From positions 62,001 to 126,000 of the IMG/VR virus record IMGVR_UViG_3300032245_001860: 64,000 bases of DNA; one strand, given 5' to 3'. Position numbers and translations under genes: made by a program. The notes below the pieces were generated by a model. The model searched no databases and was not told where the DNA came from. It saw only the letters and a list, made by a program, of their open reading frames with translations. How positions within the stretch are numbered: position 1 is the first letter of the stretch; the number at the start of each line of letters is the position of its first letter. Below, piece by piece: positions 4,167 through 62,083 of the stretch.

Positions 4167-5254
4167 TGTGGTACAAAACAGCTAAATATGGCTATATTGA
4201 TGTCCAAAAATATTTTGAAGAACAATTAGGATATGAATTAAATTTCAAAATTGAAGATTATTTAGAATATATAATAAAAAAATCTTCCAAAATTGTTCAT
4301 GGTATGATGCGCATTGATTTTGATAAATTGAATAATGAACTTCAAAATTCTCCTCTTAATTTCTTAATCAAAAGATTCGGATCTATGGAAGAATTGACTG
4401 AAGGTAATAGAGAAGGTATTGGTGCTTGGATACCATCTATGAAATATTTACTTCTAATACCTCAATTTCCAGCACAAGTTTTATTTAAAATTGTTGATGT
4501 AGCTATGCACGAACTTGCACATGCTCTGGATAAAAGAGCAGGAAAATACCCAGATGATAAATATTTTCTTATACATTTCAAAGCATTAGCTCCAATTATC
4601 ACACAGTATATGACACAGTTTTATAATGATAAAAAACAATTACTTTCAAGAGAACAAGTTTGGGATATTTTTCTAAATCTTATTGTGAAAGATATGAATA
4701 TTCCAGACGACAACAAACCTTTAAGAGAATTCCAAAGGACATTTACTGAATCTCTATGGTCGCAGAAAAAAGATGAGATATTGGATCATATTTTTGCTAT
4801 CGTAAGTAATAATCTAACTGACGATGATTCAATGGAAGAATTTTTACTCAGAGAATATTATAACTTGCCTGTAGAAGCACCAGCACAATTAAACTCATTG
4901 TATAGAGAATCATTGCCTCAGAGATTATTAGAATCTGCATTTCTTGCATATATCTCACATATATATTCTCCAAACCTAATACAAAAACTCAATCTTGATC
5001 CTAATGAAAGAAACCCTGAAGTAATTTTCAAAAAATTACAAGAAATGATTCCTGGTTTTGTGAATGCTGAAATGAAAGAAGATTTTATCAACTACATAAG
5101 GATAGAAATTTTTGATGATGTTGATAATTCTAATATATTAATTGATGGAAAAAATTTCTTGAAATCAATTAGAAAGAAACACATAAGAAGACAAGCTTAT
5201 AAAATCTTAAATGAAAATTTTGCAGAGTTTAAAAAATTAGTAGAAGCTTTGTAA
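4166..5254 (+). CDS. MWYK-tagged zincin-like metallopeptidase domain protein
   Basis: N-terminus MWYKTAK; HELAHALD (HExxH) plus downstream YYNLPVEAPA with a candidate third-ligand Glu. Confidence 0.65.
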   Translation: MWYKTAKYGYIDVQKYFEEQLGYELNFKIEDYLEYIIKKSSKIVHGMMRIDFDKLNNELQNSPLNFLIKRFGSMEELTEGNREGIGAWIPSMKYLLLIPQFPAQVLFKIVDVAMHELAHALDKRAGKYPDDKYFLIHFKALAPIITQYMTQFYNDKKQLLSREQVWDIFLNLIVKDMNIPDDNKPLREFQRTFTESLWSQKKDEILDHIFAIVSNNLTDDDSMEEFLLREYYNLPVEAPAQLNSLYRESLPQRLLESAFLAYISHIYSPNLIQKLNLDPNERNPEVIFKKLQEMIPGFVNAEMKEDFINYIRIEIFDDVDNSNILIDGKNFLKSIRKKHIRRQAYKILNENFAEFKKLVEAL

Positions 5255-5263
5255 AATATATAT

Positions 5264-5803
5264 ATGAGTTATAAAGTTCTGACATTTGAACCTAAAAAGT
5301 ATGAAAAACAAGCAAATCCTATTTTATGGAAAGCTCAAATGTTTCCGCCTTCTGAGTATCAATCTGTTGGTGTAACTTTACTAAATGATAATATTGAAGT
5401 TAATAATAGGCGCACAGAAGAAGAATGGGAAAGTCTTCTTACAGATAATGGCTTCAAATATGAATTGAATTATGACCATGAATATTGCAAAGAGTTCATT
5501 ATATTTGATACATCCTGTGTAGCTTTTTCATTTCAAATTTTTGCTTGTGATATTGATGTTTCAAATTATATGGTTCAAATAGCATCTGAATATATTCTTC
5601 CTACTTTATATATTTTAAATTTAGAAAAAGAAGGAAACATATTTCCTCAAGCTTTACTAAAAAGAATTGAAGAAGCAAACTCATCTTTGCCAAACAATAG
5701 AGTCAATAAAGATATGCTTAGAATATTGAAATCAATCGAAAAGTTAGCAGAAGAATGTCAACTTTATGAAGTAGATATTCACTACAAGCTACACAACAAT
5801 TAA
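5264..5803 (+). CDS. hypothetical protein
   Basis: 179 aa ORF; TAAAAT 6 nt before the ATG (leaderless). Confidence 0.7.
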   Translation: MSYKVLTFEPKKYEKQANPILWKAQMFPPSEYQSVGVTLLNDNIEVNNRRTEEEWESLLTDNGFKYELNYDHEYCKEFIIFDTSCVAFSFQIFACDIDVSNYMVQIASEYILPTLYILNLEKEGNIFPQALLKRIEEANSSLPNNRVNKDMLRILKSIEKLAEECQLYEVDIHYKLHNN

Positions 5804-5822
5804 TTCTATGTATAATAGAGAT

Positions 5823-6731
5823 ATGAAAATTCTTTATATCTCTCCAAATCAGAGAACTCAGCAATTTCCTTGGCTTATTGATTATCAAAATGACAGCCTT
5901 TTGTGCGGTCTTAAAGAATTGTATGGCGATGATGTAGTAGATTGTAACAAGAAATATAATCTTTACACAGATTATTCTGATGATGATGTCAATACAGAGT
6001 ATGGACGTGGGTTTACTTTTACCCGTTTATTAGATTCTGATAATGCTGATAGAGAAGATATTAGAAAGAAAATTGTAAATAAGTTTTTTGATTTAGTTGT
6101 TTATGGTAGTATTTGGCGTTGTCAAGACTACTTGGAGCTTGTTCAAGAACATTATGATTTCAACAAAATCATCATGGTAGATGGTGAAGATTCTCCAAAG
6201 TTCAATGAAGCTATCAAACTCAAAGGACTATATTTCAAGCGTGAACTGTTATTTGAACATAACCAAGAATTTCAAGAGCATTTCTGGAAGGTAAGTCCAA
6301 TCCAATTTGCCTTTCCTACAATGAAGGTCAACCCTGCTGCGAAGAAAGAGCGAAAGCTTGCTCACAGTGATCCAAGAGACAGAAAAACATATATTTTTGA
6401 AAAAGAATATGAATATTATCAAGACTATCAATTTTCGAAGTTTGCAATCACTATGCAAAAAGCTGGTTGGGATGCACTAAGGCATTATGAGATTATGGGT
6501 AATGGCTGCGTTCCACTATTCATTAATCTTCCTAATGCCCCAAGATACTGTATGTACAGATTTCCAAAAGCACTACTTACAAAGATGTTATTCTTTTATG
6601 AGTTTGATACAAAGTGGCTTGACAAGATGTACGATGAGTATTCGAATGACTTGAATGAACACTTCTTGAAGTTCAATACTACTAAAGCAAATGCTTCATT
6701 CTTCTTAAAAGATATTAGGAACTACAAATAA
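5823..6731 (+). CDS. putative glycosyltransferase (GT-B C-terminal-like)
   Basis: YQFSKFAITMQKAGWDALRHYEIMGNGCVP resembles the C-terminal GT1/exostosin-like motif; TATAAT 6 nt before ATG 5823 suggests the start MKILY. Confidence 0.65.
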   Translation: MKILYISPNQRTQQFPWLIDYQNDSLLCGLKELYGDDVVDCNKKYNLYTDYSDDDVNTEYGRGFTFTRLLDSDNADREDIRKKIVNKFFDLVVYGSIWRCQDYLELVQEHYDFNKIIMVDGEDSPKFNEAIKLKGLYFKRELLFEHNQEFQEHFWKVSPIQFAFPTMKVNPAAKKERKLAHSDPRDRKTYIFEKEYEYYQDYQFSKFAITMQKAGWDALRHYEIMGNGCVPLFINLPNAPRYCMYRFPKALLTKMLFFYEFDTKWLDKMYDEYSNDLNEHFLKFNTTKANASFFLKDIRNYK

Positions 6732-6757
6732 AAAATCCCCCATAAGGGGGATTTTTT
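6730..6757. terminator. bidirectional intrinsic terminator
   Basis: aaaaaatccccc-ataa-gggggatttttt between convergent genes. Confidence 0.85.
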
Positions 6758-10331: not shown

Positions 10332-10450
10332 TTTGAATCCTTACAATTGGATAAACAATAATACCACACAATTGAAATACGCCATAGGTTTACAAAATGT
10401 TTTTTGTTTGTATAATAAGTTTGATCAAATGATCTTAGAGGTTAACCAAA

Positions 10451-10792
10451 ATGGATGAGACAGTAGAAGTTACAGATGGAGTTTTGGCAGATGGTGAGTC
10501 TGATCGCCCTGCTGTTACTCATGATGAATATCTTGAGTTAGTTTCAATGCGACAAACAGTGCTTGAGCTCAAGGCTCAGAAGGCTGATGTTCTTGAATTT
10601 GTAAATGTTGCTCAGCAGTACGCTGCACAGCTTCAAGGCGCAAATGAGAGACTTGGATTGATCAACGATGCAATCACTGAGAATTCTGAAGCTCTTCAAG
10701 AGCGAATGAAGGAGATTGTTGAGCCATTCAACGTCAGTGGTGAGTTTTCAATTTCTGACACTGAGCCACATTTCATCGTACCTGCAAGCTAA
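10451..10792 (+). CDS. hypothetical acidic coiled-coil protein
   Basis: 113 aa; upstream TATAAT and GAGG RBS; own terminator. Confidence 0.7.
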   Translation: MDETVEVTDGVLADGESDRPAVTHDEYLELVSMRQTVLELKAQKADVLEFVNVAQQYAAQLQGANERLGLINDAITENSEALQERMKEIVEPFNVSGEFSISDTEPHFIVPAS

Positions 10793-11119: not shown

Positions 11120-11671
11120 CTATCCCTTAATTGTTTTAGCTTTTTTCTTAGCTTCCTTTATTGCTTCCTTTTCATTTTTTTCATTTCTATAAGCTTCTTT
11201 TGGATGCTTATATCTTTTTACTTCAACTTCTATTCTTGGATTTTCTTTATCATAATGGATCATATGTTCGTCATTATCAACCCAATGGATCCACATGTCA
11301 TCCTTGATGATTCCATGAGCTTGAATGATGTCTCCATTAGCTTGTTGGTATCCACATTCATCACCAACAATCCAAGAGTCTAAATAAACTTTCAACTTGA
11401 TAGAAACACCGAAATCTAAGGGTTCTAATCCTTCATTTTTCCATACTGATTCACAGTATTCTTTGCAGTGCTTTTCATATTTTTCATAAAGCAATGAAGG
11501 TAAAATTTTAGTAAATCCACCACGTCTTACTACTCTTTGTGATGTTTTTTTAGTTGAAGGTCGGCCAGGTATTGTAAATCTCAAAATCAATTCATGATTT
11601 TCTAAGTTTTCTAAAGCCTTTTGTTTATCTTCTTGACTTGATAAATCAATTCGATATTGTAAATGTTCCAT
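11120..11671 (-). CDS. RusA-like Holliday junction resolvase
   Basis: FTIPGRPSTKK...GDIIQAHGIIKDD...YDKENPRIEVEV; ATG at 11671 with TATAAA 7 nt upstream. Confidence 0.7.
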   Translation of the reverse strand: MEHLQYRIDLSSQEDKQKALENLENHELILRFTIPGRPSTKKTSQRVVRRGGFTKILPSLLYEKYEKHCKEYCESVWKNEGLEPLDFGVSIKLKVYLDSWIVGDECGYQQANGDIIQAHGIIKDDMWIHWVDNDEHMIHYDKENPRIEVEVKRYKHPKEAYRNEKNEKEAIKEAKKKAKTIKG

Positions 11672-11688
11672 TACAATATTTATACATA

Positions 11689-34793: not shown

Positions 34794-34821
34794 AATAAAG
34801 GTCTCGCAAGAGACCTTTATT
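34794..34821 (+). terminator. intrinsic terminator
   Basis: aataaaggtctc-gcaa-gagacctttatt. Confidence 0.8.
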
Positions 34822-34827
34822 GTTTTA

Positions 34828-34836
34828 TGATAAAAT
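34828..34836 (+). promoter_or_regulatory. extended -10 promoter of a leaderless transcript
   Basis: TGaTAAAAT 6 nt before ATG 34843. Confidence 0.55.
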
Positions 34837-34842
34837 AAGATC

Positions 34843-35598
34843 ATGGAAAATAAAGAAATATCTTTCCAACAATTCATAAGAAATCTCAATGAAAATACTC
34901 ATGCTCAAAAGTATTTTAAGTCAAGAGGTTTATCAAAGAATATTGTCAAAGAAGGATTGGTAGGTTTTTGTCCTACTTACTCAAGATATTCTTTTCCTTT
35001 ATTGAGAGGAAGGTTGATAGTTCCCATAAGAGATGTATATGGGAAAACTATTGCTCTCGCTGGCAGACAAATACCAGATATTAAGGATGACTTAATAACT
35101 TCTTTTTGGGAATCTTTTGGAAGCGAACCATCAAAATGTCAAGATCGTATTTCGAAATGGTCAAAAGGCAAATGGATTAATGAACCTTATGTTAAGGCTA
35201 AAAATTTGTTTTTTCTTGATCAGTCTAAAAAATATGTACGAGAGAAAAATTACATTATCTTAGTTGAAGGATATTTTGATGTTTATTCACTTTATGACAA
35301 TGGGATTAAGAATGTTGCAGCTATATGCGGAACATCTATTTCTGAATATCAAATTGCATTAGCTTCAAGGTTTTGCGATAATATTGTTACTCTTATGGAT
35401 TCAGATTTTGCTGGAAAAACTGCAGCTAACAAAATTGTTTCCAAGGTAGAAGATTTAGGTTTAAAAGCTTTTAAGGTTTATTTACCTGTTGGAATGGATC
35501 CAGATGATTTTGCTAAGAATTATGACACTTCATTTTTAAATGAATCTATTAGCAACATGATAGCAGATTCAAAAAAAGAACTATATATTGGGATTTAA
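34843..35598 (+). CDS. dnaG: DNA primase catalytic (TOPRIM) domain lacking the zinc finger
   Basis: YFKSRGL, RLIVPIRD..G..IALAGR, KWIN, VEGYFDV, MDSDFAG, DPDDF. Confidence 0.88.
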   Translation: MENKEISFQQFIRNLNENTHAQKYFKSRGLSKNIVKEGLVGFCPTYSRYSFPLLRGRLIVPIRDVYGKTIALAGRQIPDIKDDLITSFWESFGSEPSKCQDRISKWSKGKWINEPYVKAKNLFFLDQSKKYVREKNYIILVEGYFDVYSLYDNGIKNVAAICGTSISEYQIALASRFCDNIVTLMDSDFAGKTAANKIVSKVEDLGLKAFKVYLPVGMDPDDFAKNYDTSFLNESISNMIADSKKELYIGI

Positions 35599-43217: not shown

Positions 43218-43224
43218 ACTTTAC

Positions 43225-43251
43225 ATTTCTAAAAAGATGCAATATAATCCT
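43225..43251 (-). promoter_or_regulatory. candidate SigH-like late promoter AGGA-N17-AGAAAT
   Basis: Exact motif 7 nt before ATG 43217; overlaps the TATAAT of the divergent gene. Confidence 0.6.
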
Positions 43252-43254
43252 TAC

Positions 43255-43575
43255 ATGGGAAAGCCAATTGTACGTGAAGTAAAAATTCTTGATGCAGTTC
43301 TTAAGGAAGACGAAGGAACTGAAGATGAGCCAAAAGTTGTTCAATATATTTGGCTACAGTTACAAGATACAAAAACAGATAGAGTATATACATCTCAATT
43401 GTCACTTGATGATATCAAAGACATAACTGGTATGGATAGATATTTAGAAGGCAGAGAGCTAATTAATTTTACCATTGCACTGAAAGCAAGAGAGACACCT
43501 TTGTCTTTAGTTTTCAATCCTGATGCAGAAGAAATTACAGCTGATATGATAAAGAATGAAGAGGAAATAAATTAA
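43255..43575 (+). CDS. hypothetical protein
   Basis: TATAAT (43243-43248) 6 nt before ATG 43255 (MGKPIVREV). Confidence 0.65.
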   Translation: MGKPIVREVKILDAVLKEDEGTEDEPKVVQYIWLQLQDTKTDRVYTSQLSLDDIKDITGMDRYLEGRELINFTIALKARETPLSLVFNPDAEEITADMIKNEEEIN

Positions 43576-44774: not shown

Positions 44775-44805
44775 AAATAAACCCCTCATAAAGAGGGGTT
44801 TATTT
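44775..44805. terminator. bidirectional intrinsic terminator
   Basis: aaataaacccctc-ataaa-gaggggtttattt. Confidence 0.85.
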
Positions 44806-46487: not shown

Positions 46488-47319
46488 TTTTTAATTCCCT
46501 ACTTAATGTTTGGAATAATTCTAAAATCTGAGGTTGGGCGTCAAGGTCTTTTCTTTGAGTGTAGTATGCGTAATGAACTGCTATAAAACCACCATAAATA
46601 CAATTGGGCTTTTCTCTTTCTGCTGGCTTTATTTGAGAAAGCCACTTTTCATCATCTTTTCCACAATGAACAAATTGGGCAAACTCAGACCCCATCCAAG
46701 AAAAAAAGTTTATACTATATCTTTCGAAATCAGTAAGAACCCATTTATTAAACTTCATCAAGTGAAGAGTTCCATTCTTCAAATGATTATAAAAACACAT
46801 AAAATGTCTGACAGCATACGAATAATTGTACCAAGCAGCACTGACAGAACTATAATCAACTGCTGGAAAATCTTCATGCATATTTAAAGCACCAATCTTG
46901 TCATGTATATAATAATTTATGGCATTATTGACAGTATTGGCAAAGACTAAGAAATACTGAGGATTATTAATTCTGAATCTAATGAAATTTTCAAATTCTT
47001 TATGTTCAAACCATACAATATCGTCATCTATTTTGCAGTACACAGTATTGGGGTCTATACAATATTCATAAAATCTTGCAACATTTTTACTTGTATACTT
47101 AAATTCTTCAATGTAAGGTAATTGAATGACCTCAAAAAAATCAGGATATTGGTTTACAAGAGATTCAAGGTAAAGCAAATCTTCTTCAACATTAGTGTTC
47201 AACCAAAAAACATGCTTATCAATTATTGGTCTACTTGCCAAAAGATACTCTACTAAAATTTCAACATATCTTTTTCTACCATATGGAGAATTGGTAACAA
47301 CTCTATAATTATCAACCAT
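46480..47319 (-). CDS. putative GT-A glycosyltransferase (paralog 1)
   Basis: GRKRY, YCKIDDDIV, ANTVNN, DDEKWL, AVHYAY. Confidence 0.65.
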   Translation of the reverse strand: MVDNYRVVTNSPYGRKRYVEILVEYLLASRPIIDKHVFWLNTNVEEDLLYLESLVNQYPDFFEVIQLPYIEEFKYTSKNVARFYEYCIDPNTVYCKIDDDIVWFEHKEFENFIRFRINNPQYFLVFANTVNNAINYYIHDKIGALNMHEDFPAVDYSSVSAAWYNYSYAVRHFMCFYNHLKNGTLHLMKFNKWVLTDFERYSINFFSWMGSEFAQFVHCGKDDEKWLSQIKPAEREKPNCIYGGFIAVHYAYYTQRKDLDAQPQILELFQTLSRELKNG

Positions 47320-47364
47320 TGCAAAATATCCTTATACAATCTACAATACATTAGGATTATACAA

Positions 47365-47847
47365 ATGAATAATGTCGATTTTGAAGATGCTCCAGATATT
47401 CTTTCTATAGCTAAACAACTACAAGAAAAATACTATGCTTTTATTGGATCGGTAAATTTAGATTCTATTTACTTTACCAAAATGATAGGTTATAAATCAA
47501 GAAATGCCCCAGTGTATGTGATGAGTGGTTTGACTCAGGCTTGGGCAAGATCTGTTTTAAATAGTCTCCAAACAAGAAAAAACTATTGCTTAGGTGTTTG
47601 GGCTGATGAATGGGATGAACTTGAAAAATCCAAAAAAGAATGGATAGTTTTCAGATGTTTATATTCTATTAGTCCAGCTGATGATGGTAAATTAAGACCA
47701 TTTGATGTTAATGATTATGGTTTTATTGTTGAGTATTTTGTCAGAGTAGGAATAGGACCTTACTGGGAAAGTAAAGAAAATTTACCTTCTTTGCTTGATG
47801 GAAATGATATACTTCCTTTGATAATTCCAATGGATGATAACGAATAA
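47365..47847 (+). CDS. phage metallopeptidase-like protein with a degenerate active site
   Basis: WDELEKSKKEWIVFRCLYSI...GKLRPFDVNDY resembles W..L....K..LI.HEL.HI...HDV.DF but lacks the histidines. Confidence 0.5.
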   Translation: MNNVDFEDAPDILSIAKQLQEKYYAFIGSVNLDSIYFTKMIGYKSRNAPVYVMSGLTQAWARSVLNSLQTRKNYCLGVWADEWDELEKSKKEWIVFRCLYSISPADDGKLRPFDVNDYGFIVEYFVRVGIGPYWESKENLPSLLDGNDILPLIIPMDDNE

Positions 47848-48928: not shown

Positions 48929-49624
48929 ATGGCGACCGAAGATCCAAAAATTGTAAGAATAGTTCAAAAAGCAAAAAAAGGTGACGAAAAATCTTTTAAA
49001 ATGCTGCTTAAGATGGTAGATGGTGACTTGCGTAAAATCGCAGGTCATTATTTTATTCTTGGCGGTGACCGTGAAGATGTCATGCAAGAGTTGAGACTTG
49101 GAGTTTACAAAGCAGTAAATTCATATGACCCAACAAAAGACACCACTTTTAAAAACTTTTGTGTTAATTTAGTTTGTAAGAGACATTTAGCAACAGCCAT
49201 TTCGTCTGCAAAAAGAATGAAAAATTCAGTGTTGAATGATTCTATTTCTTTAGATGCTCCAATTATTTTAGGAGATGACGGCAATTTACAAACTCTTGCA
49301 GACTTTATTCCAGAAAAACAAAACCCATACGATGAATCACCAGAAGTTAATCTTGTTGAAGATATCATAATCAAAGAAGAATATGAAATCAATACACAAA
49401 AACTATTAACAAGACTTACTCCATTAGAAGCTGAAATTTTTAATGAGTATGGACTTAATTCATCATATAAAGAAATTTCAATTACTCTTAATGTTCCTGC
49501 CAAATGCGTTGACAATGCACTTACAAGAATTAGAAAAAAAGCTAATGAAGTGTATATTCAATACAGAAAAGATGATGAAAAGAAGGAACCATATGGAGAA
49601 ATTGATAAAAACCCTAACAAGTAA
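48929..49624 (+). CDS. sigH: SigH-like RNA polymerase sigma factor
   Basis: YFILGGDREDVMQE..LGVYKA, TAISSAKRMK..LNDSISLDAPI, SYKEI...KCVDNALTRIRKK, characteristic of SigH. Confidence 0.85.
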   Translation: MATEDPKIVRIVQKAKKGDEKSFKMLLKMVDGDLRKIAGHYFILGGDREDVMQELRLGVYKAVNSYDPTKDTTFKNFCVNLVCKRHLATAISSAKRMKNSVLNDSISLDAPIILGDDGNLQTLADFIPEKQNPYDESPEVNLVEDIIIKEEYEINTQKLLTRLTPLEAEIFNEYGLNSSYKEISITLNVPAKCVDNALTRIRKKANEVYIQYRKDDEKKEPYGEIDKNPNK

Positions 49625-49634: not shown

Positions 49635-49663
49635 TTGCCAAATATTCTACGATGAAGTAGAAT
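49635..49663 (+). promoter_or_regulatory. sigmaA-type promoter of leaderless purA
   Basis: TTGCCA-17 nt-TAGAAT, 7 nt before ATG 49671. Confidence 0.7.
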
Positions 49664-49670
49664 ATTTATT

Positions 49671-50666
49671 ATGGAAACTTCAAATGTTGACGTTGTAATC
49701 GGCATGCAATATGGCGATGAAGGCAAGGGAAAGATAGCCAATCAAATGGCTTCAACTGGTGAATATGACTATGTTATCCGCTTCAATGGTGGAGGCAATG
49801 CTGGTCATACAATTTACCTCAATGGAGAGAAAATTGTTACACATCTTGTTCCTTGCGGGATTATGCATGGTGTTACTTCTGTCATCGGTAATGGTTGTGT
49901 TATCAATACACAAAAATTATTTGACGAACTTGAGTATCTTAAAGGATTTGGATTCGATACATCGCTTCTAAAGATTGCAAAAAACGCACACATAATTACT
50001 CAAGAACATATTGACGAAGATTCCAAAGATACTAAAATTGGAACAACTCGCACTGGTAATGGCCCTTGTTATAGAGACAAAGTGGCTCGTACTGGAATTC
50101 GTGCCGAGTATATTCCTGAATTAGAACCTTTTTTGATTGATATGCATAGTCTAATTCATGCAGAACCAAAGAAGTTTTTAGCTGAAGGTGCTCAAGGATA
50201 TTGGCTTGATATTGACTTTGGCGACTATCCTTTTGTCACATCTTCAAACACTGGTGTAGGAGCAGTACTAAATAATGGTTTCAATTTTAAGCAAGTACGG
50301 GATGTTGTCGGGGTTATCAAGTGTTATTCTACCTATGTTGGAGCTAAAGGATATCAAAAAGATGACGAGAGATTTGAACAACTCAGAGAAATTGGTCAAG
50401 AGTATGGAGCTACGACAGGAAGACCAAGACAAATCGACTGGCTAAATATTGATGAAGTGATAACAGCTTGCCAAATGAATGGCATAACTAAATTGATTGT
50501 CAATAAGATGGATGTTCTTAGTAAAGTAAATAATGGATGGAATTGGTACCAAGAAGGAAAGTTGCATTCAGTTGAAGATGAAGGTACATTTACACTTTGT
50601 CTGATGAGCAAAATCATGCAAAGCATTCCAAATATCAAATTTGAATTCCAAGGGCAACTACATTGA
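49671..50666 (+). CDS. purA: adenylosuccinate synthetase, short form
   Basis: QYGDEGKGK, GGNAGHT, IGTT, EGAQG, YPFVTSS, GATTGRPR, NKMD. Confidence 0.9.
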   Translation: METSNVDVVIGMQYGDEGKGKIANQMASTGEYDYVIRFNGGGNAGHTIYLNGEKIVTHLVPCGIMHGVTSVIGNGCVINTQKLFDELEYLKGFGFDTSLLKIAKNAHIITQEHIDEDSKDTKIGTTRTGNGPCYRDKVARTGIRAEYIPELEPFLIDMHSLIHAEPKKFLAEGAQGYWLDIDFGDYPFVTSSNTGVGAVLNNGFNFKQVRDVVGVIKCYSTYVGAKGYQKDDERFEQLREIGQEYGATTGRPRQIDWLNIDEVITACQMNGITKLIVNKMDVLSKVNNGWNWYQEGKLHSVEDEGTFTLCLMSKIMQSIPNIKFEFQGQLH

Positions 50667-51784: not shown

Positions 51785-51785
51785 T

Positions 51786-52784
51786 ATGTCAAGAATTTAT
51801 ATTGGATCAAAAGTAGCTGCAATAGATTCTGTCAAGAAAGAATTTCCTGACAGAATTCTTGTTTTATGTGATAATCCAGAAAATCAAGCAAAGAATTATT
51901 CTGTGTTCTTTGATCAAAATAAACTTTTTTTACATGATAACCCAAATGTAGAAAAGCTTAAGATTATTCAAACTCAGATTTCAACAAATAAAGGCACACA
52001 TTTTTTATTTTACGATGATGAGAGTTTTGATGGTCGAAACTCCTTAATTCAATCTATTAAGAAATCCAACCTTATATTTGATCATTCATATCCTTTGTAT
52101 GGTGATTATGCTGGCTTGAGAAGAGCTATTAATAGTTACTTAAATACATCTAAAAAATCAATAGATACAAATTGTTATGACTGGTTGTATAAAAATTGCC
52201 CCACTGTCAAAGTAAAATCTAAAACAACCGGATCTAAAAAAGAATCAATTTGCTATGATGTTGATTTATTGAACAAAGAGTTTGAAAAAATACTTTCAAT
52301 CAATAACAATATTAGCATTGAGGATTTACAAAACTCATCATTTGTAACTGACGCTGACATATTCGAATTTATTGAATATGTCTTGAATAACAATATTGAA
52401 GAAGCTTTTCTTTTATCAGAAAAGTTAATTGATTCTATTGGCGAACAAGCTTTATTGCTTATTCTTCTTTCACAACTTATCTTTGTTCTTGAAATAGTTT
52501 CATGTAAAGAAAATAATATTTACAACTTGGATGAAGTGACTAAGATTGTGGAGAAGAAAGATTTACTTGGAAAATACTTCAGTAATGATTGGCAAGAGTG
52601 TATTTTTACAACTAAAACTCAAAACCCTATTCGCATAAAAATTGAAATGTCAAAGAATAGACCAAGTTCTGACAAAATTTCACAGATGATAAGTTATGTG
52701 ATAGATTCTATTACGCACTTGAGAAATAATGGCAAGGTAGAACAAAGTATGTTTTTGCTTTTGAATAAAATGTTATCTGTATAA
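51786..52784 (+). CDS. putative DNA polymerase III delta subunit (HolA-like)
   Basis: FDGRNSL, DLLNKEFEKI, ADIFEFIEYVL; follows dnaN. Confidence 0.6.
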   Translation: MSRIYIGSKVAAIDSVKKEFPDRILVLCDNPENQAKNYSVFFDQNKLFLHDNPNVEKLKIIQTQISTNKGTHFLFYDDESFDGRNSLIQSIKKSNLIFDHSYPLYGDYAGLRRAINSYLNTSKKSIDTNCYDWLYKNCPTVKVKSKTTGSKKESICYDVDLLNKEFEKILSINNNISIEDLQNSSFVTDADIFEFIEYVLNNNIEEAFLLSEKLIDSIGEQALLLILLSQLIFVLEIVSCKENNIYNLDEVTKIVEKKDLLGKYFSNDWQECIFTTKTQNPIRIKIEMSKNRPSSDKISQMISYVIDSITHLRNNGKVEQSMFLLLNKMLSV

Positions 52785-52791
52785 TTTATGA

Positions 52792-53355
52792 ATGCAAGAT
52801 AACTATGAACATATTAATAAGCTTGTAGAGTTGTGTAAAAATGATGACTCTGATGCATTATTTCAACTATACGATTTCTACAAGCCATTATTGCTTTCAT
52901 CAGTAAGTCGTTGCATATATAAAAATCCAAAGCTTTCAAGATATAGAGAAGATATCTTCAGAGAGTCAGTGTTTGTACTGAAAAAGTTGATTGATCAATA
53001 CGATCCAACTCTTACTTATTTTTCTTACTTTTTATCAACCAGAATAGATATTAATCTTTTTAGATATGTAACTGACAAATACCAAACAGATGAATACTTT
53101 ATTGAAGACTATTGCCCAGACGAAGATTCATATGATCCGTTTAATAAAATAAATAGTGCAATTTCAATTCATGCAGCTTTGACAAAATTGAATGAAAAGC
53201 AACGTGAAGCTATTGAATTGTATTTTTTTGAAGGATTAGATCAAGAACAAGCATCAATTAAATTAAATATCACCCAAAGTTCTTTTTCAAAAAGATTGCA
53301 ACGAGGCTTATCTAAGATGAAAGAACTACTGGGTGATGATTTCTTACTTGACTAA
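52792..53355 (+). CDS. sigma-70 family sigma factor (regions 2 and 4, ECF-sized)
   Basis: ALFQLYDFYKPLL, YDPTLTYFSYFL, LNEKQREAIELYFFEGLDQEQASIKLNITQ; TATAAT 6 nt before the ATG. Confidence 0.85.
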   Translation: MQDNYEHINKLVELCKNDDSDALFQLYDFYKPLLLSSVSRCIYKNPKLSRYREDIFRESVFVLKKLIDQYDPTLTYFSYFLSTRIDINLFRYVTDKYQTDEYFIEDYCPDEDSYDPFNKINSAISIHAALTKLNEKQREAIELYFFEGLDQEQASIKLNITQSSFSKRLQRGLSKMKELLGDDFLLD

Positions 53356-57041: not shown

Positions 57042-57068
57042 AAACAAGCCGCTATATGCGGCTTGTTT
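57042..57068 (+). terminator. intrinsic terminator
   Basis: aaacaagccgc-tatat-gcggcttgttt. Confidence 0.8.
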
Positions 57069-57089
57069 TGCTTTTGTATAAAATTTACT

Positions 57090-57776
57090 ATGTCAGATAA
57101 AAATGAAGAAATTGTTGATGTAATTGTACCTGCGTCAGAAAAAGTAGTAACTGGGCCTGCTAAGTTATTCAGAGAATTGAAGGAAACAGATAAACCATAT
57201 CACCCTTTACCTCCTGACAACATGAATGACATTTCTTATCCTCAATTTTTAGAACCAAGGTGCTCAATTTGTTCTTCCCCATTTAGAGATTTAGCAGAAC
57301 ATGTATTTCTTGAAAGTGGTAAGAAACCCCAGTCTGTCATTCAATTCTTTGCTCATTATTTTGATGCTAAACTAAATTGGATGCAGATTAACACTCATAT
57401 GGAGCAACATTGTGATTTCAAAAAAATCTCAACATCTGGTTTAAAAAATTATGAGCAAAGAGAAGAACTTATTGCTCCTTGGATTTTTAGAGAACACCAG
57501 TTAGCTCTCACTGCTCTTTTAGTTGAACTTGATGATGTAAGGGGCATGGATTGTTCCAAAAACAATGACTTAAAGCTTAAAAGAGCATCTATGGTTGAAA
57601 AGTTAATTAGTAAAATCTTATATGTAAAAGAACAAAGAGATAATCAAGGTGTTTTTGCTATAAACATATTTGAAATTCTTGTCAAATTGCACGAACAAAT
57701 GGAAAGTGAAGCAGATAAGAAAATTATCAGAGATGAGATGCAATTTTTAAGACAAAAAATACAAGCTGATAACTAA
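57090..57776 (+). CDS. putative terminase small subunit
   Basis: CSIC...HMEQH Zn/HTH-like N-terminus, helical C-terminus; TAATG-coupled to TerL. Confidence 0.55.
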   Translation: MSDKNEEIVDVIVPASEKVVTGPAKLFRELKETDKPYHPLPPDNMNDISYPQFLEPRCSICSSPFRDLAEHVFLESGKKPQSVIQFFAHYFDAKLNWMQINTHMEQHCDFKKISTSGLKNYEQREELIAPWIFREHQLALTALLVELDDVRGMDCSKNNDLKLKRASMVEKLISKILYVKEQRDNQGVFAINIFEILVKLHEQMESEADKKIIRDEMQFLRQKIQADN

Positions 57777-59893
57777 TGAGAAAACCTAACCTTCAAAAAA
57801 CTCAACAAAATGATGCCAAATCTCAACTTCTTCTACAAGCATCTGAAGTTGAGAAGTTTTTTAAGGAATCAGAATATGCTGGAGAATTTTCTGATGATAT
57901 TGTTCCTGCAACAAGAGCTGAAGTAATTCCTCCACCAGCACCTGAAAAATCAAGATTCAATCCTGATAAAATTGTTGATATCATCACATTTATTGAGCAT
58001 CCTTATTTTTGCAACCTCAAGCCTTATCCTTGGCAGAAACTTATCCTTAAGTGTTTTTATATGGGTCAAGAGGGTAATACAAATCTTGTAATAAATAATG
58101 TCAAGCAAGAAACAGGATGCGATGGTTGTGTGTGGAGTTATATCAAGGAAAATGAAGATCTTTTTTATAAATCCAGAAAGAACCAGAAACAAATAAAAAC
58201 AATCTTTTCAGTAGTTAATTCTCCCTGTCTAACATGTAACCGCTTGAATGATGAAGTAAGAAACGAAAGATATGAAGCTGCTAAAGAAGAAGCCACAAAT
58301 CCAGATGCCGAAAGACAAGTAGAAGAATTATCTCAAAGAGCAATACTTGATAATTTTGAAACAGAAAATGATCTTTTATACTCTGATGAATTTGATCCAA
58401 AGTTAAGAGTTCAAGTAAATGAAAAAAGCTCAAAAAGATACAAATTTCAAGAGTTAGTGTTAGTGCTTGGCAGACGTTCAGGAAAATCATTCTTAGTGTC
58501 TGCTATGGCTCTTTATGAACTATATAGGCTTATTTCTATGGGACATCCTCAATCAAGATATGGGCTGATGGAATTTGATGAAATAGTATTACTTAATGTA
58601 GCTCGTAATGAAGAACAGGCAAAGAAAGCAATCTTCTCTAAAATCAAACAAACGGTTTTAGCTTCTCCTTTTTTTCAACCTTACATTGGAAAAGATACAG
58701 AACTCGAAATGAGATTCTATACTGAAAATGATGTCAAAGAAAATGAAAGAAGAGCATCGAGAAACTTAAATCCTTTTGCTGGCTCTTTAGTTTTAAGATG
58801 TGGTTCAAGTAATGCTTCTGGTCTTGTAGGTCTTACTTGTTGGTGTATCATTATGGACGAAGTTGCAGCTATGGCAGGAGATAATCCTGACTCTGGTGTT
58901 GACTATGCTCTATATGATGATCTGAAGCCATCACTTGCTACATTTGGTAAAGATGGAAAGATGATGATGCTTTCCAACCCTAAAGGTCCGCTTGGATTGC
59001 TTTATGATTTACATGAAAATAGATTAGAAGACCCTGCAACTCTTGTAATGAGATTGCCCACTTGGTTAACTAATCCGAACATTGATAAAGCTTGGCTTGA
59101 TGATCAAAAAAAGAAAAATCCAGTTGAGTTTACTATGCAATATGGTGCTGAGTTTGGAGCTGCATCTTCAGACCCAATGTTTGATCAAGATTCTATCAAA
59201 AGAATGTTTTCTTCAATGAGAATGACACCAAGATTAGAATTTGCACAACCACAAGTTGATTATTACTGTCACTTGGATCCTGCAAGAACTTCAGACTACT
59301 ATGCCTTAGCTGTATCTCACACTGAAGAAATATATGGAACTGTGGGTCCCGATTTCAAACCACTTAAAAGAGTGGTTATTGATCACATTCATTTTTGGAA
59401 TCCGCAAACAAAAAATCAACCTATTTCTGAAAGAGAAGTTGAAAATTATGTAATTGATTTACATAGAAGATTTAAATTTAAACAAGTTAGTATTGATCAA
59501 TGGAATTCTCAGTCTTCTGTAATAACTCTTCAAAGCAGAGGTGTGCCAATTATTGAAAGACAGTTCAATAAAGAATACAAAGAAAAGATTTACACAGAAC
59601 TGACACAGCTTATCAGAGAAGATAGAATAGATATTTATGACCTTTCAAGTGGTGCATATTTAGATGCGCAAAACAATAAACATAATTTGAATGAAATAGA
59701 AGAAGCTAAAATTCAATTTTTATTCTTACAAAAGAAATGGAAAGGTAAAAGATACTACATTGAAGCTTTATCGGGATACAAAGATGATATTTGTGATGCT
59801 ATAGCTGCTGTCAGTTATGAAGCCTTAACAAATAAAATTATCACAAGATCTCCAAGAAATAGAATGGTCAGTTTGGGTGGCAGGTATAGATAG
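57776..59893 (+). CDS. terL: terminase large subunit
   Basis: YPWQ, LGRRSGKS Walker A, IIMDEVA Walker B, LSNP coupling motif, HLDPA and KDDICDAIA nuclease motifs. Confidence 0.88.
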   Translation: MRKPNLQKTQQNDAKSQLLLQASEVEKFFKESEYAGEFSDDIVPATRAEVIPPPAPEKSRFNPDKIVDIITFIEHPYFCNLKPYPWQKLILKCFYMGQEGNTNLVINNVKQETGCDGCVWSYIKENEDLFYKSRKNQKQIKTIFSVVNSPCLTCNRLNDEVRNERYEAAKEEATNPDAERQVEELSQRAILDNFETENDLLYSDEFDPKLRVQVNEKSSKRYKFQELVLVLGRRSGKSFLVSAMALYELYRLISMGHPQSRYGLMEFDEIVLLNVARNEEQAKKAIFSKIKQTVLASPFFQPYIGKDTELEMRFYTENDVKENERRASRNLNPFAGSLVLRCGSSNASGLVGLTCWCIIMDEVAAMAGDNPDSGVDYALYDDLKPSLATFGKDGKMMMLSNPKGPLGLLYDLHENRLEDPATLVMRLPTWLTNPNIDKAWLDDQKKKNPVEFTMQYGAEFGAASSDPMFDQDSIKRMFSSMRMTPRLEFAQPQVDYYCHLDPARTSDYYALAVSHTEEIYGTVGPDFKPLKRVVIDHIHFWNPQTKNQPISEREVENYVIDLHRRFKFKQVSIDQWNSQSSVITLQSRGVPIIERQFNKEYKEKIYTELTQLIREDRIDIYDLSSGAYLDAQNNKHNLNEIEEAKIQFLFLQKKWKGKRYYIEALSGYKDDICDAIAAVSYEALTNKIITRSPRNRMVSLGGRYR

Positions 59894-59916
59894 AGTTAGA
59901 TTTATAATATACAAAT

Positions 59917-60945
59917 ATGTCTTCAAAGAATATTAAAACTGCTCAATTTGGTGGCGTTGGTGGAGGTGGAAATGGTTCACCTTTTGCACCTGGAAAAAGC
60001 CCGATTGGATCTGGTGGAAAAAACCCAGGAGGTTATGAAGTTAACTCTGACTGGGACGAAAACAAAACGCTTGAAAAAATGCTGTCAAAAACCCATGAAG
60101 ATATGGATCTGTCTGATAGAAATTTCGAATCAAGATTAACACCACAACATAAATTTTTTGAAGAAAACAAAGCTTATGTCTTAACTCCAGCTGAAAGATT
60201 GAAAGAAAAGTTCAGAGCTGAATTACACGCTTACAAAAAATCTTTAGAAGAGCATGCTGACAGTTTACATAAAAATTCAGTCAAATATATTCAAGAACAT
60301 TACAAACTGACTGACGATGACTTACAAACAATGGAACAAAGATTACATCAAAGAAGACATTTTGATGATTCCAAGAAAAGACAATTCAAATATGAAGATC
60401 AAGTTCCAGATCAAATAAAGCCAGAAAGAGCACATCCAGTTTTATCAGATACACAAATGAATCGTATTGCTACCATTGTCATGAGAGACAAAATTACTCA
60501 AGAAAATGACGAAGATGTAGAACAAAGAAACATTTTTGATAAAAAGAGATTTACTTACCCTCCTATTGGAAGAACACCAGTGCTTACTCGTGGTGATGAA
60601 TTAGGTCAATATTTTGAAGATGTGTTACATGAATACACCCCAGAGTCAAATGGTGCTATGGAAGTCGGAGATCTTGTAACAGATGAAACCAATCCTGATT
60701 ACGAACCAAATATTCATCCTCGTAATGAAATAGCCAATGAACCGGCTGATGATGAATTAGATGGCATAAATGTATTTCAAACATTAGAAGGCAATTTGCA
60801 TAATAAAAAAGCACCTGATAATCAATTTGACAGAAATAATATGTCATCAGATAAAGAAAAATTTGGTGACGAAGATATGGGTGTTGAAGATGTTTACAAA
60901 GGTTCTGCTTGGTTTGGGTCTCATACTCCAGCTTCATTTGGATAA
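59917..60945 (+). CDS. tagged hypothetical acidic protein
   Basis: MSSKNIKTAQFGGVGGGGNG; AGGT-N18-ATAAT upstream. Confidence 0.65.
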   Translation: MSSKNIKTAQFGGVGGGGNGSPFAPGKSPIGSGGKNPGGYEVNSDWDENKTLEKMLSKTHEDMDLSDRNFESRLTPQHKFFEENKAYVLTPAERLKEKFRAELHAYKKSLEEHADSLHKNSVKYIQEHYKLTDDDLQTMEQRLHQRRHFDDSKKRQFKYEDQVPDQIKPERAHPVLSDTQMNRIATIVMRDKITQENDEDVEQRNIFDKKRFTYPPIGRTPVLTRGDELGQYFEDVLHEYTPESNGAMEVGDLVTDETNPDYEPNIHPRNEIANEPADDELDGINVFQTLEGNLHNKKAPDNQFDRNNMSSDKEKFGDEDMGVEDVYKGSAWFGSHTPASFG

Positions 60946-60961
60946 TCTGTAAAATAATCAT

Positions 60962-62083
60962 ATGAAATATGATTATTTGATTATTGGAGCAGGTTTATTT
61001 GGATCTATATTTGCACATGAAGCTAATAAACTGGGCAAAAAAGTATTAGTTATAGAGAAAAGAAATCATATTGGTGGAAATTGTTACACTGAACAATATG
61101 AAGACTATCATATACACACTTACGGTCCACATATTTTCCATACTTCTCAAAAATATATTTGGGATTATATAAATCAATTCACAGAATTCAATAATTATTC
61201 GCATAGAGTAAAGTCAAATTATCAAGGCAAGCTTTATTCTATGCCTATCAACTTAATGACTTTGCATCAAGTATGGCCTGAAATTATTACGCCAGAAGAT
61301 GCTAAAAAGAAAATAGAATTAGAAATTATTCCTTGTGAAAATCCTAAAAACTTAGAAGAACATATATTGAGCATGGTTGGACCTACTTTGTATCAATATT
61401 TTATTCATGGATATACAAAGAAACAATGGGGCACAGATCCTAAAAATCTTCCAGCATCGATCATAAAAAGATTGCCAATTAGATATAATTTCAATGATAG
61501 ATGGTTTCATGACCATGATATTTATGAAGGCATTCCTGTTAATGGATATACTCCTATTTTTCACAAGCTCTTAGAAGGCATAGAAACTATTACTAATATT
61601 GATTATTTTGCAGATAGAACATACTGGGATTCAAAAGCCAATAAAGTTGTTTTTTCAGGTCAAATTCAACAATATTTTGATTACATGTTTGGCGATTTAG
61701 AATACAGAACATTAGAATTTCATAGTTACAAAATTCCTAATTCTGATTTTCAAGGATGTTCTATAATTAATTATCCCGATCCAGAAACAAGATGGACAAG
61801 AATAACTCAACACAGACACTTTACAAACTCAAAATCTACAAATGATTATGTTACATACGAATATTCTAAAAACTATGACAAAAATAATCCAGAGCATATT
61901 CCTTATTACCCTGTAAACACACCAACAAACAATGAAACTTACAACAAATACAAAGAATATTTAGAAATAAATCATTCTAACATTATTGTTGGTGGAAGAT
62001 TAGGCAATTACAGGTACTACGATATGGATATGACAATAGGTAACGCATTAGCTACAGTAAAAAAAGAATTTGCAGGAAAATAA
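60962..62083 (+). CDS. glf: UDP-galactopyranose mutase
   Basis: GAGLFG, HIGGNCY, YGPHIFHT, YTKKQWG, RLPIR, PYYP, GRLGNYRYYDMD. Confidence 0.95.
   Translation: MKYDYLIIGAGLFGSIFAHEANKLGKKVLVIEKRNHIGGNCYTEQYEDYHIHTYGPHIFHTSQKYIWDYINQFTEFNNYSHRVKSNYQGKLYSMPINLMTLHQVWPEIITPEDAKKKIELEIIPCENPKNLEEHILSMVGPTLYQYFIHGYTKKQWGTDPKNLPASIIKRLPIRYNFNDRWFHDHDIYEGIPVNGYTPIFHKLLEGIETITNIDYFADRTYWDSKANKVVFSGQIQQYFDYMFGDLEYRTLEFHSYKIPNSDFQGCSIINYPDPETRWTRITQHRHFTNSKSTNDYVTYEYSKNYDKNNPEHIPYYPVNTPTNNETYNKYKEYLEINHSNIIVGGRLGNYRYYDMDMTIGNALATVKKEFAGK

What the first reader, a model, noticed from the sequence alone, without database searches (positions are those of the whole stretch)
5252..60964. Widespread leaderless transcripts for non-structural genes
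Seen: TANNNT boxes 6-7 nt before an ATG with no Shine-Dalgarno at 5264 (TAAAAT), 5823 (TATAAT), 34843 (TGaTAAAAT), 43255 (TATAAT), 47365 (TAGGAT), 49671 (TTGCCA-17-TAGAAT), 52792 (TATAAT) and 60962 (TAAAAT), and approximately at 57090 and 11671(-). That spacing puts the transcription start on the A of ATG. It corrects several ORF-track starts. Inference: the host translates leaderless mRNA efficiently, which constrains host identity and makes each gene a self-contained cassette.
Basis: partly seen in the sequence, partly recalled or inferred. Interest (0 to 1): 0.6.

Follow-up and report, generated by a model that had tools for sequence, protein, structure and literature searches.

The report
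Leaderless genes in a freshwater jumbo phage
In this uncultured 316-kb freshwater phage, about one gene in seven has a promoter -10 box placed so that transcription should start on the A of its ATG; this no-leader design is known from a few bacteria and one Thermus phage and is conserved in this phage's relatives.

Summary
The window lies in a 315,852-bp IMG/VR jumbo phage (33% GC).

- **Positional peak:** TANNNT starts exactly 12 nt before the ATG in 36 of 305 genes. The rate at 11,938 other ATGs is 2.4% (p = 6e-15). Near-consensus boxes are 15-fold enriched.
- **Controls:** the peak survives with boxes that cannot be stop codons. It recurs in three related contigs and is absent from phage T4.
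- **Promoter features:** A at -9/-8, TG just upstream, TTG at -35 twice as often, and a pyrimidine at -1.
- **Two flavours:** TGnTAnAnT, often with a -35 (early region), and TGTAnAA(t) with no -35.
- **Conservation:** Site 47365 does not.
- **Leadered contrast:** the same boxes also occur 18-45 nt upstream of other genes, often followed by a Shine-Dalgarno.

No RNA data exist, so start sites are inferred. The pattern is not limited to non-structural genes, since the portal gene has it. The host remains unknown. This is a new member of a known kind, closest to Thermus phage phiYS40 and to TA-led bacterial genes.

The parts
5250..5266 (+). TGTAAAAT-N6-ATG. The -10 box is 5252-5257, and its TAA is also the stop codon of gene 4166-5254. 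It precedes gene 5264-5803 (179 aa, no Pfam match).
   Evidence: Orthologues at 47% identity keep TGTAAAAT or TGTAGAAT followed by N6-ATG.
5809..5825 (+). TGTATAAT-N6-ATG. The start is corrected to 5823 for gene 5823-6731; the ORF track had 5808.
   Evidence: Orthologues in G002 and G004 (64%) have TGTACAAT-N6-ATG, and their first ATG aligns with 5823.
11669..11686 (-). TGTATAAA-N7-ATG on the minus strand. The start is corrected to 11671 for gene 11120-11671; the ORF track had TTG at 11692.
   Evidence: The G002 orthologue has TGTACAAA-N6-ATG; the G004 orthologue has no box.
34798..34845 (+). Terminator-like hairpin (about 34798-34826) followed by the extended -10 TGaTAAAAT (34828-34836), then N6-ATG. 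It precedes the Toprim/DnaG-like primase gene 34843-35598.
   Evidence: Seven orthologous loci at 61-70% identity (six distinct sequences; L004 and L005 are identical) all keep TGa + (T/G)AnnAT with 5-7 nt to the ATG, while the rest of the intergenic region diverges.
43220..43257 (+). TTTACA-17-TATAAT-N6-ATG. The start is corrected to 43255 for gene 43255-43575 (106 aa).
   Evidence: This is the best sigma-70-type match in 43-62.5 kb (11 of 12). Three orthologues of 105 aa begin at TGgTAAAAT-N6-ATG.
49635..49673 (+). TTGCCA-17-TAGAAT-N7-ATG in front of a short adenylosuccinate-synthetase-like gene, 49671-50666.
   Evidence: The orthologues (81-86%) keep TTGCTA/TTGCTT/TTGATT-17-TAGAAT/TAAGAT-N6-ATG.
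52778..52794 (+). TGTATAAT-N6-ATG in front of a sigma-like gene, 52792-53355 (sigma-70 region 4). The box contains the TAA stop of gene 51765-52784.
   Evidence: The orthologues (52-62%) keep TGTATAA(T/A/C)-N6 followed by ATG, or GTG in one lineage.
57042..57092 (+). Intrinsic terminator 57042-57068, then TGTATAAA (57075-57082), then N7-ATG. The start is corrected to 57090 for gene 57090-57776, which lies directly upstream of the large terminase (57776-59893).
   Evidence: The ORF-track TTG at 57063 lies inside the terminator stem. Three orthologues (75-77%) keep the hairpin followed by TGTATAA(A/C)-N6/7-ATG.
60948..60964 (+). TGTAAAAT-N6-ATG in front of the UDP-galactopyranose mutase gene, 60962-62083.
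   Evidence: The NAD-binding Rossmann domain starts at residue 7 and an in-frame stop lies 12 nt upstream, so the start codon is fixed. The G001 orthologue (60%) keeps the arrangement, as does a 31%-GC contig, L043.
47352..47367 (+). TAGGAT-N7-ATG at gene 47365-47847. This is a doubtful member.
   Evidence: It falls outside the sharp N6 peak and has no TG. The G002 and G004 orthologues have no box.
59905..59919 (+). TAATAT-N6-ATG at gene 59917-60945.
   Evidence: The three orthologues have no box.
10409..10453 (+). Internal contrast: the same TGTATAAT box, here followed by a roughly 27-nt leader carrying GAGG, then the ATG at 10451.
   Evidence: SD duplex energy -6.5 kcal/mol.
48929..49624 (+). 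Phage sigma-factor-like gene (sigma-70 regions 2 and 4; nearest solved relative is a sigma-H). It is a possible reader of one promoter class.

Best explanation
About 46 genes of this jumbo phage (roughly 14% of genes), including 9 in the window, are expressed as leaderless mRNAs. They account for about half of the promoters recognisable by sequence.

**Proposed mechanism.**
1. A bacterial-type -10 element occupies -12 to -7 relative to the A of the ATG.
2. RNA polymerase holoenzyme therefore starts transcription at that A. The core enzyme must be the host's, because no phage RNA polymerase was found.
3. The 5'-terminal AUG is then presumably bound directly by ribosomes with initiator tRNA, as in known leaderless systems, with no Shine-Dalgarno.

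**Two promoter flavours do this.**
- TGnTAnAnT, often with a -35 TTGnnn and an A/T-rich upstream box. These sit mostly in the early region, and I infer they are read by the host's primary sigma factor.
- TGTAnAA(t) with no -35, spread over replication, nucleotide-metabolism and packaging genes. These could be read by the host sigma in extended -10 mode or by one of the three phage sigma-like proteins.

**Shown:** the position, composition, statistics and conservation of the elements.
**Inferred:** the transcription start, the sigma factor used, and the mode of translation.
For: 1. **Sharp peak.** TANNNT at offset -12 occurs in 36 of 305 genes, against about 10 at other offsets and 2.4% at 11,938 other ATGs (p = 6e-15). 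Near-consensus boxes occur in 24 of 305 against 0.53% (p = 1e-20).
2. **Not a stop-codon artefact.** TA[CT]NNT gives 20 against about 5 (up to 14 at other offsets). T at -7 is coupled to TA at -12 (59% vs 28%, p = 2e-5).
3. **Promoter signature around the box**:
   - A at -9 in 72% and at -8 in 64%, against 33%;
   - TG at -15/-14 in 25% and at -14/-13 in 25%, against 6-7%;
   - TTG at -35 twice as frequent;
   - pyrimidine at -1 in 80%, G at -1 in 0%.
   A full -35/-10 score of 9 or more falls at -12 in 9 genes, against 0-3 (mostly 0) at any other offset.
4. **The motif predicts gene starts.** TGTAnAA sits at -14/-15 in 17 genes against 0.33 expected. Of 28 TGTAnAA-N7/8-ATG sites, 22 open an ORF of 40 aa or more, against 18% of random ATGs (p = 6e-12).
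5. **SD depletion.** An SD k-mer is present in 8% of these genes against 34% of the rest.
6. **Leadered contrast.** The same boxes 18-45 nt upstream are often followed by an SD (about a third to half of the listed cases). The palindromic TTGTACAA serves divergent gene pairs both with SD leaders (289084/289133) and without any leader.
7. **No room for a leader.** The divergent genes at genome 146816(-) and 146839(+) are 22 bp apart. One palindrome, ATTGTACAAT, gives TGTACAAT-N6-ATG in both directions.
8. **Replication.** Three related contigs give 11/85, 11/132 and 7/79 (pooled p = 4e-10). T4, run through the same pipeline, gives 1/136.
9. **Orthologue conservation.** Box presence is linked between orthologues (odds ratio 21, p = 3e-4). 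The box letters and spacer sequence vary while the spacing is kept.
10. **Terminators.** Hairpins lie directly before the boxes at 34843 and 57090.
11. **Precedents.** A TANNNT 6-7 bp before ORFs has been validated experimentally as a leaderless promoter in Deinococcus (PMC12340547). 'TA-led' genes are described in PMC3160421.
Against: - No RNA data exist for this phage. All 21 sequencing runs found are DNA metagenomes, so no transcription start has been observed.
- Several boxes overlap the stop codon or the last codons of the upstream gene (5264, 52792). Part of their conservation could therefore come from coding constraint, and these genes could also be translated from read-through polycistronic RNA.
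- Some class B boxes end in A or C rather than the T that is almost invariant in sigma-70 -10 elements (57090, 11671).
- The 5' ends are not predicted to be less structured than those of other genes.
- Starts were assigned as the first ATG of each ORF, so the gene set is approximate. More than half of the genes show neither signal.
Confidence: 0.8

Rival explanations
1. The boxes act on RNA, not DNA. On this view the A/U-rich UAnAAU or UGUAnAA, 6-7 nt before the AUG, is a non-Shine-Dalgarno ribosome-binding or enhancer element (for example for protein S1) on polycistronic transcripts.
For: More than half of the genes lack an SD, so SD-independent initiation on leadered mRNA must occur in this system. 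Several boxes lie at tight gene junctions with no terminator before them (5264, 5823, 52792, 60962). The spacing constraint is of the same order as that of an SD.
Against: - The -35 hexamers at 17 bp and the TG extension are DNA promoter features.
- The same motifs occur at variable distances followed by a normal SD.
- A palindromic box serves both strands of divergent pairs.
- Terminators precede two of the boxes.
- The motif is not complementary to the 3' end of 16S rRNA (my reading of the sequence).
Confidence: 0.1
2. The boxes are real promoters, but transcription starts a few nucleotides upstream or downstream of the A. That would give very short leaders, or the true start codons would lie further downstream.
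For: The spacing varies from 5 to 7 nt among orthologues of the primase gene and the 57090 gene. RNA polymerase start-site choice is flexible by 1-2 nt (established knowledge).
Against: The genome-wide peak is a single position, N6, with A at +1 and a pyrimidine at -1. That is the preferred start-site context. Protein-family alignments begin within 7-8 residues of the proposed starts for the PurA-like and Glf genes. mRNAs with leaders of 1-3 nt behave essentially as leaderless ones, so this is a refinement rather than a true rival.
Confidence: 0.07
3. The pattern is a chance or compositional artefact of an AT-rich genome, of first-ATG start calling, or of in-frame stop codons before ORFs.
For: TANNNT is common at 33% GC, at about 2.4-3% per position. 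In the window alone the loose criterion is only about twice chance (p = 0.05). Sigma-70-like matches are no commoner than in shuffles. Sixteen of the 36 boxes begin with TAA or TAG.
Against: The whole-genome p-values range from 1e-9 to 1e-23. The peak holds for boxes free of stop codons. It is replicated in relatives, absent from T4 with the same pipeline, and conserved between orthologues.
Confidence: 0.03

Closest known systems
Leaderless ('TA-led') genes of bacteria: the -10 motif TANNNT 6-7 bp before ORFs in Deinococcus-Thermus, Actinobacteria and some low-GC lineages (PMC3160421, PMC12340547)
   Same: A -10 box lies about 6 nt before the start codon and there is no SD. In low-GC genomes the box reads TAtAAT with a TG peak in front, which matches what is seen here. 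The motif also allows start codons to be re-annotated.
   Different: Here it occurs in a phage genome. About 14% of genes are involved, against about 20% in Actinobacteria and 30-46% in Deinococcus-Thermus. Half of the TG extensions abut the box directly (TGTAnAA) instead of lying one base away. No transcriptome evidence is available.
Thermus thermophilus phage phiYS40: most middle and late transcripts are leaderless (Sevostyanova et al. 2007, as summarised in PMC3594737)
   Same: It is a large tailed phage that relies on host RNA polymerase and has many leaderless genes. From my memory of the primary paper, which I could not open, its middle/late promoters lack a -35 and carry an extended -10. 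Its large terminase is a distant relative of this phage's (24% identity).
   Different: This phage comes from freshwater, has 33% GC and an unknown host. It encodes three sigma-like proteins. Leaderless starts also occur in its early-type promoters. The shift in host IF2 and IF3 levels reported for phiYS40 cannot be assessed, and no IF3 homologue is encoded here.
Lambda cI mRNA from the PRM promoter, the textbook leaderless phage transcript (PMC10491246)
   Same: Transcription starts on the A of the AUG from a sigma-70 promoter, and translation proceeds without an SD.
   Different: Lambda has one regulatory gene of this kind. Here dozens of genes across functional modules share the design.
Phage T4 late promoters (TATAAATA, read by the phage sigma gp55)
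   Same: They are A/T-rich, consist of a -10 element only, have no -35, and are read through a phage-encoded sigma. Class B (TGTATAAA/TGTATAAT) looks similar.
   Different: T4 shows no box at -12 from its ATGs (1 of 136 genes). Its late mRNAs have leaders with an SD (established knowledge). The sigma-like proteins here carry region 4, which gp55 lacks (established knowledge).

Membership tests
Leaderless (TA-led) genes | A -10-like TANNNT box whose 3' end lies 6-7 nt before the start codon, at a frequency above background | tested here: met
   36 of 305 genes at N6 against 2.4% background. The peak is replicated in three relatives and absent from T4.
Leaderless (TA-led) genes | No Shine-Dalgarno before the start codon | tested here: met
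   An SD k-mer is present in 8% of box-bearing genes against 34% of the others. All window sites score -2 kcal/mol or weaker except 47365.
Leaderless (TA-led) genes | Start codon is AUG (GUG is tolerated in some phyla) | tested here: inconclusive
   Across the three overlapping patterns there are 56 ATG hits, one TTG and no GTG. ATG dominates all starts in this genome, so the test is weak (p = 0.12). One orthologue of the sigma gene appears to use GTG.
Leaderless (TA-led) genes | The primary transcript's 5' end maps on, or within 1-2 nt of, the start codon | not testable with these tools
   No RNA run holds this sequence.
Sigma-70-type extended -10 promoters | TG at -15/-14, one base upstream of the -10 hexamer; a -35 is dispensable | tested here: inconclusive
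   Class A meets this: the TGnTAnAnT hexamer falls at -12 in 9 genes against 0.19 expected. Class B has its TG at -14/-13, abutting the box, and its last position is only 55% T. That departs from the canonical form.
phiYS40-type phage programme of leaderless middle/late genes | Most middle and late transcripts are leaderless, and the host IF2/IF3 balance is shifted | not testable with these tools
   Temporal classes and host factors are unknown. Leaderless-type starts are found in early-type cassettes, in replication and packaging genes and at the portal gene. No IF3 or S21 gene is present in the phage.

The most novel reading that the evidence does not exclude
The -35-less TGTAyAA(t) boxes may form a phage-specific promoter class read by one of the phage's own sigma-like proteins. 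One of those genes, at 52792, itself sits behind such a box in every relative examined. On this reading the phage couples a private transcription programme to SD-independent, leaderless translation. That would let its middle genes be expressed even if host or SD-dependent initiation is shut down. It would be a sigma-driven version of what phiYS40 is reported to achieve through changed IF2 and IF3 levels.
Probability: 0.2. Interest if true: 0.65.

Novelty: new member of a known kind. Interest (0 to 1): 0.45.

Why it matters
**Annotation.** The -10-box-to-ATG rule fixes start codons in this uncultured jumbo-phage lineage. It corrects four starts in the window and marks transcription-unit boundaries.

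**Host inference.** A phage in which roughly half of the recognisable promoters are leaderless needs a host, or a phage-modified translation apparatus, that handles 5'-AUG mRNAs well. That is a soft clue to host identity. The SD signal and the TTGACA/TATAAT-type early promoters argue against a Bacteroidota host, even though one DNA match points to a Tenacibaculum phage.

**Phage biology.** This adds a second, unrelated and environmentally abundant example to phiYS40. It also provides a compact set of conserved promoter-ATG modules that can be tested directly in reporters.

Tried and rejected
- **Host identification.**
  - No WhiB gene, an actinophage hallmark, is present.
  - The best bacterial hit of the Glf gene is 67% identical, on a 3.1-kb, 31%-GC contig of a 'Gammaproteobacteria' assembly.
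  - That assembly's large contigs range from 29% to 54% GC, mostly about 46%, and show no -12 peak. The small contig carries the same TGTAAAAC-N6-ATG. I take it for a misbinned relative of the phage, not host evidence.
- **Translation factors in the phage.** No IF3 and no ribosomal protein S21 were found.
- **Phage RNA polymerase.** Neither a T7-like enzyme nor a beta subunit was found. The T7-like family's control rang nowhere, so that absence is weak.
- **5' structure.** Predicted folding of +1 to +36 does not differ between leaderless-type genes and the others, so this test is uninformative.
- **Consensus promoter scans.** Hits are as frequent as in shuffled sequence. Only position relative to the ATG carries signal.
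- **Other promoter motifs.** K-mer enrichment upstream of genes returned only -10-type boxes, the SD and the early-region palindrome. No separate late motif emerged.
- **Stop-codon artefact.** Considered and rejected.
- **Searches not run.** The large protein searches were not used, because no claim here rests on absence of relatives. No alternative genetic code was needed.


Full report
**What the sequence is.** The window is bases 62,001-126,000 of a single 315,852-bp IMG/VR virus record (33% GC, CheckV completeness 88%). It is a jumbo tailed phage. In the window it encodes:
- a large terminase (57776-59893);
- a DnaE-type polymerase (28459-31713);
- a DnaB helicase, a RecJ-like exonuclease and a UvsX-like recombinase;
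- the large subunit of ribonucleotide reductase.

No close cultured relative exists. Near-identical DNA is found only in DNA metagenomes, most of them labelled freshwater or aquatic, and no RNA run holds it.

**Checking the observation.** Sigma-70-like matches as such are no commoner than in shuffled sequence.

I therefore called 305 ORFs over the whole genome, taking the first ATG, a minimum of 70 aa and a greedy non-overlapping set. I then asked where TANNNT lies relative to the ATG.
- There is one sharp peak, with the box starting at -12 (a 6-nt gap): 36 genes, against about 10 at other offsets on average.
- The rate at 11,938 other ATGs is 2.4% (p = 6e-15).
- For six near-consensus hexamers the enrichment is 15-fold (p = 1e-20).

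**Controls.**
- Sixteen of the 36 boxes begin with TAA or TAG and could be in-frame stops. The peak is equally strong for TA[CT]NNT (20 against about 5 on average). T at -7 is coupled to TA at -12.
- The same pipeline on 100 kb of phage T4 (34-36% GC) gives 1 of 136 genes at -12.
- Three related contigs of 76-120 kb, whose terminases are 73-77% identical, each show the peak: 11/85, 11/132 and 7/79 (pooled p = 4e-10).

**What surrounds the box.** Compared with all other TANNNT sites in the genome, the boxes at -12 have:
- A at -9 (72%) and at -8 (64%);
- TG at -15/-14 (25%) or at -14/-13 (25%), against 6-7%;
- TTG in the -35 zone twice as often;
- a pyrimidine at -1 in 80% and never a G, with A at +1.

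This is the signature of a bacterial promoter and start site. A combined -35/spacer/-10 score of 9 or more falls at -12 in nine genes, against 0-3 (mostly 0) at any other offset.

**Two flavours of promoter.**
- **Class A** is TGnTAnAnT, often with TTGnnn 17 bp upstream. It is concentrated at 10-27 kb of the genome, in repeated small-gene cassettes.
- **Class B** is yTGTA(y)AA(t), with no -35 at all.
  - TGTAnAA occurs at -14/-15 in 17 genes against 0.33 expected.
  - Of the 28 TGTAnAA-N7/8-ATG sites in the genome, 22 open an ORF of 40 aa or more, against 18% of random ATGs (p = 6e-12).

Unbiased k-mer enrichment upstream of genes returns these same boxes (GTATAAT, TGATATA, TGTACAA, TGGTATA), together with the Shine-Dalgarno. 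The union of the patterns gives 46 candidate leaderless starts.

**Contrast with leadered genes.** The genome does use the Shine-Dalgarno. AGGAG-type words peak at -14 to -8, and about 35% of genes have one. Box-bearing genes are depleted in it, 8% against 34%.

The same promoter families also occur 18-45 nt upstream of other genes, and an SD then often lies in between, in about a third to half of the listed cases. Examples are the early cassettes at genome 19159, 21957 and 24920. Class B examples include window 10409-10453 (TGTATAAT, then GAGG, then the ATG at 10451) and the divergent pair at 289084/289133.

About 31 boxes lie in the leaderless position, against an excess of about 27 at leadered distance. 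Roughly half of the recognisable promoters are therefore leaderless.

The most telling case lies outside the window. Genes at genome 146816(-) and 146839(+) start 22 bp apart, and one palindrome, ATTGTACAAT, gives TGTACAAT-N6-ATG in both directions. Nothing else fits in that gap.

**Conservation.** Orthologues of 47-86% protein identity keep the arrangement while the letters of the box and the spacer change.

| Window site | Orthologue arrangement |
|---|---|
| 5264 | TGTAAAAT or TGTAGAAT |
| 5823 | TGTACAAT |
| 34843 | TGa + TAAAAT/TACAAT/TAGGAT/TATGAT/GATAAT, 5-7 nt to the ATG, at seven loci (six distinct sequences) |
| 43255 | TGgTAAAAT |
| 49671 | TTGCTA-17-TAGAAT-N6 |
| 52792 | TGTATAA(T/A/C)-N6 |
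| 57090 | terminator + TGTATAA(A/C)-N6/7 |
| 60962 | unchanged |
| 11671(-) | TGTACAAA-N6 in one of two orthologues |

Across 116 orthologue pairs with co-linear N-termini, box presence is linked (odds ratio 21, p = 3e-4). Site 47365, and the unlisted 59917, are not conserved.

The orthologues begin at the ATGs corresponding to 5823, 43255 and 57090. The ORF-track TTG at 57063 lies inside a terminator stem. For 11671(-), support comes from one orthologue only.

**Scope.** The pattern is not confined to non-structural genes.
- The portal gene (genome 130575) has TGgTATAAT-N7-ATG, and its three relatives have TGG/cGG-TATAAT-N7-ATG.
- The gene just before the large terminase has it too.
- In the window the box-bearing genes encode a primase-like protein, a PurA-like enzyme, a Glf enzyme, a sigma-like protein and several proteins of unknown function.

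**Mechanism.** No phage RNA polymerase was detected. Three sigma-like genes are present: window 48929-49624, window 52792-53355, and one at about 311 kb.

The likeliest working is as follows:
1. Host core polymerase with the host primary sigma reads class A promoters.
2. Either the host sigma in extended -10 mode or a phage sigma reads class B promoters.
3. Transcription starts at the A of the ATG.
4. The 5'-AUG is then translated as in known leaderless systems.

Steps 1-4 are inference. No IF3 or S21 gene is encoded. Predicted 5' structure does not differ from that of other genes.

**Comparison with what is known.**
- In-silico 'TA-led' genes were described across bacteria. In low-GC genomes the box reads TAtAAT with a TG peak, as it does here (PMC3160421).
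- In Deinococcus, a TANNNT 6-7 bp before about a third of ORFs has been shown experimentally to be the -10 of leaderless genes and has been used to correct start codons (PMC12340547).
- Among phages, phiYS40 of Thermus makes most middle and late mRNAs without a leader (PMC3594737). I could not open the primary paper.

This finding is therefore a new member of a known kind. What is new is the setting (an abundant, uncultured freshwater jumbo-phage lineage), the abutting-TG box TGTAnAA, and the palindromic two-way promoters.

**Host.** The host is unresolved. The SD signal and the TTGACA/TATAAT-type early promoters do not fit Bacteroidota. This is so even though the only DNA-level match (72.5% identity over 432 bases, about 2% of the 20-kb query) is to the ribonucleotide reductase gene of a Tenacibaculum phage. 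The attempt through the Glf gene led to a probable misbinned phage contig.

**Verdict.** The core interpretation is supported at about 0.8 confidence, pending 5'-end mapping. The host inference and the restriction to non-structural genes are not supported as stated.

Noticed in passing
G000:C1:1134-27222 (outside the window, upstream of it): There are 22 copies of a perfect or near-perfect palindrome, TGGGGTG(A/G)TA-N4-6-TA(T/C)CACCCCA. Each sits 7-9 nt from TTATTTGACA and next to the A/T-rich box and -35 of an early-type promoter. No U-tract follows, so it is not a classic terminator. On the opposite strand, TTGACA-N16 places a TAATAT in the hairpin loop. It could be an operator, a terminator variant or a hairpin promoter; I could not tell which.
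   Followed up: partly
G000:C1:146814-146841 (window coordinate about 84814, beyond the window): Two divergent genes (326 and 270 aa) start 22 bp apart. They share one palindromic element, ATTGTACAAT, so that each has TGTACAAT-N6-ATG. A second divergent pair, at 289084/289133, uses the same palindrome but with SD-bearing leaders. The leaderless-type starts at 56267(-) and 56302(+) lie about 35 nt apart; which box serves each was not worked out.
   Followed up: partly
window 48929-49624 and 52792-53355; G000:C1 about 311100-311650 (-): Three sigma-factor-like genes are present in one phage. The first has regions 2 and 4 and is nearest to a solved sigma-H. The second shows only region 4 by Pfam. 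Their promoter specificities are unknown.
   Followed up: partly
window 44804-47319 (-): Three tandem genes of 275, 287 and 279 aa all begin ATGGTTGAT and each has an SD. They look like a tandem paralogue family.
   Followed up: no
window 626(-), 4166(+), 43217(-); also genome 130051 and 147687: Several genes start with the same ATGTGGTAC (Met-Trp-Tyr). This may be a dispersed paralogue family.
   Followed up: no
window 49671-50666 and 60962-62083: The phage carries metabolic genes: a short (331 aa) adenylosuccinate-synthetase-like protein and a UDP-galactopyranose mutase. Both sit behind leaderless-type promoters.
   Followed up: partly
L043 (contig CAUYTX010000202.1, 3118 bp, in an assembly labelled Gammaproteobacteria bacterium CCP3-SC1AL1): This 31%-GC contig sits in an assembly whose large contigs are mostly about 46% GC. 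It carries a Glf gene 67% identical to the phage's, with the same TGTAAAAC-N6-ATG. It is probably a phage contig binned with a bacterium.
   Followed up: partly
G000:C1:5486-8459: Four tRNA genes (Leu-TAA, Lys-TTT, Ser-TGA, Met-CAT) cluster near the left end of the record.
   Followed up: no
G000:C1:57473 and 58228 (just upstream of the window): Two adjacent 240-aa paralogues both start ATGAAGGGTTTA. Each has its own TGTACAA(T/A)-N7-ATG.
   Followed up: no
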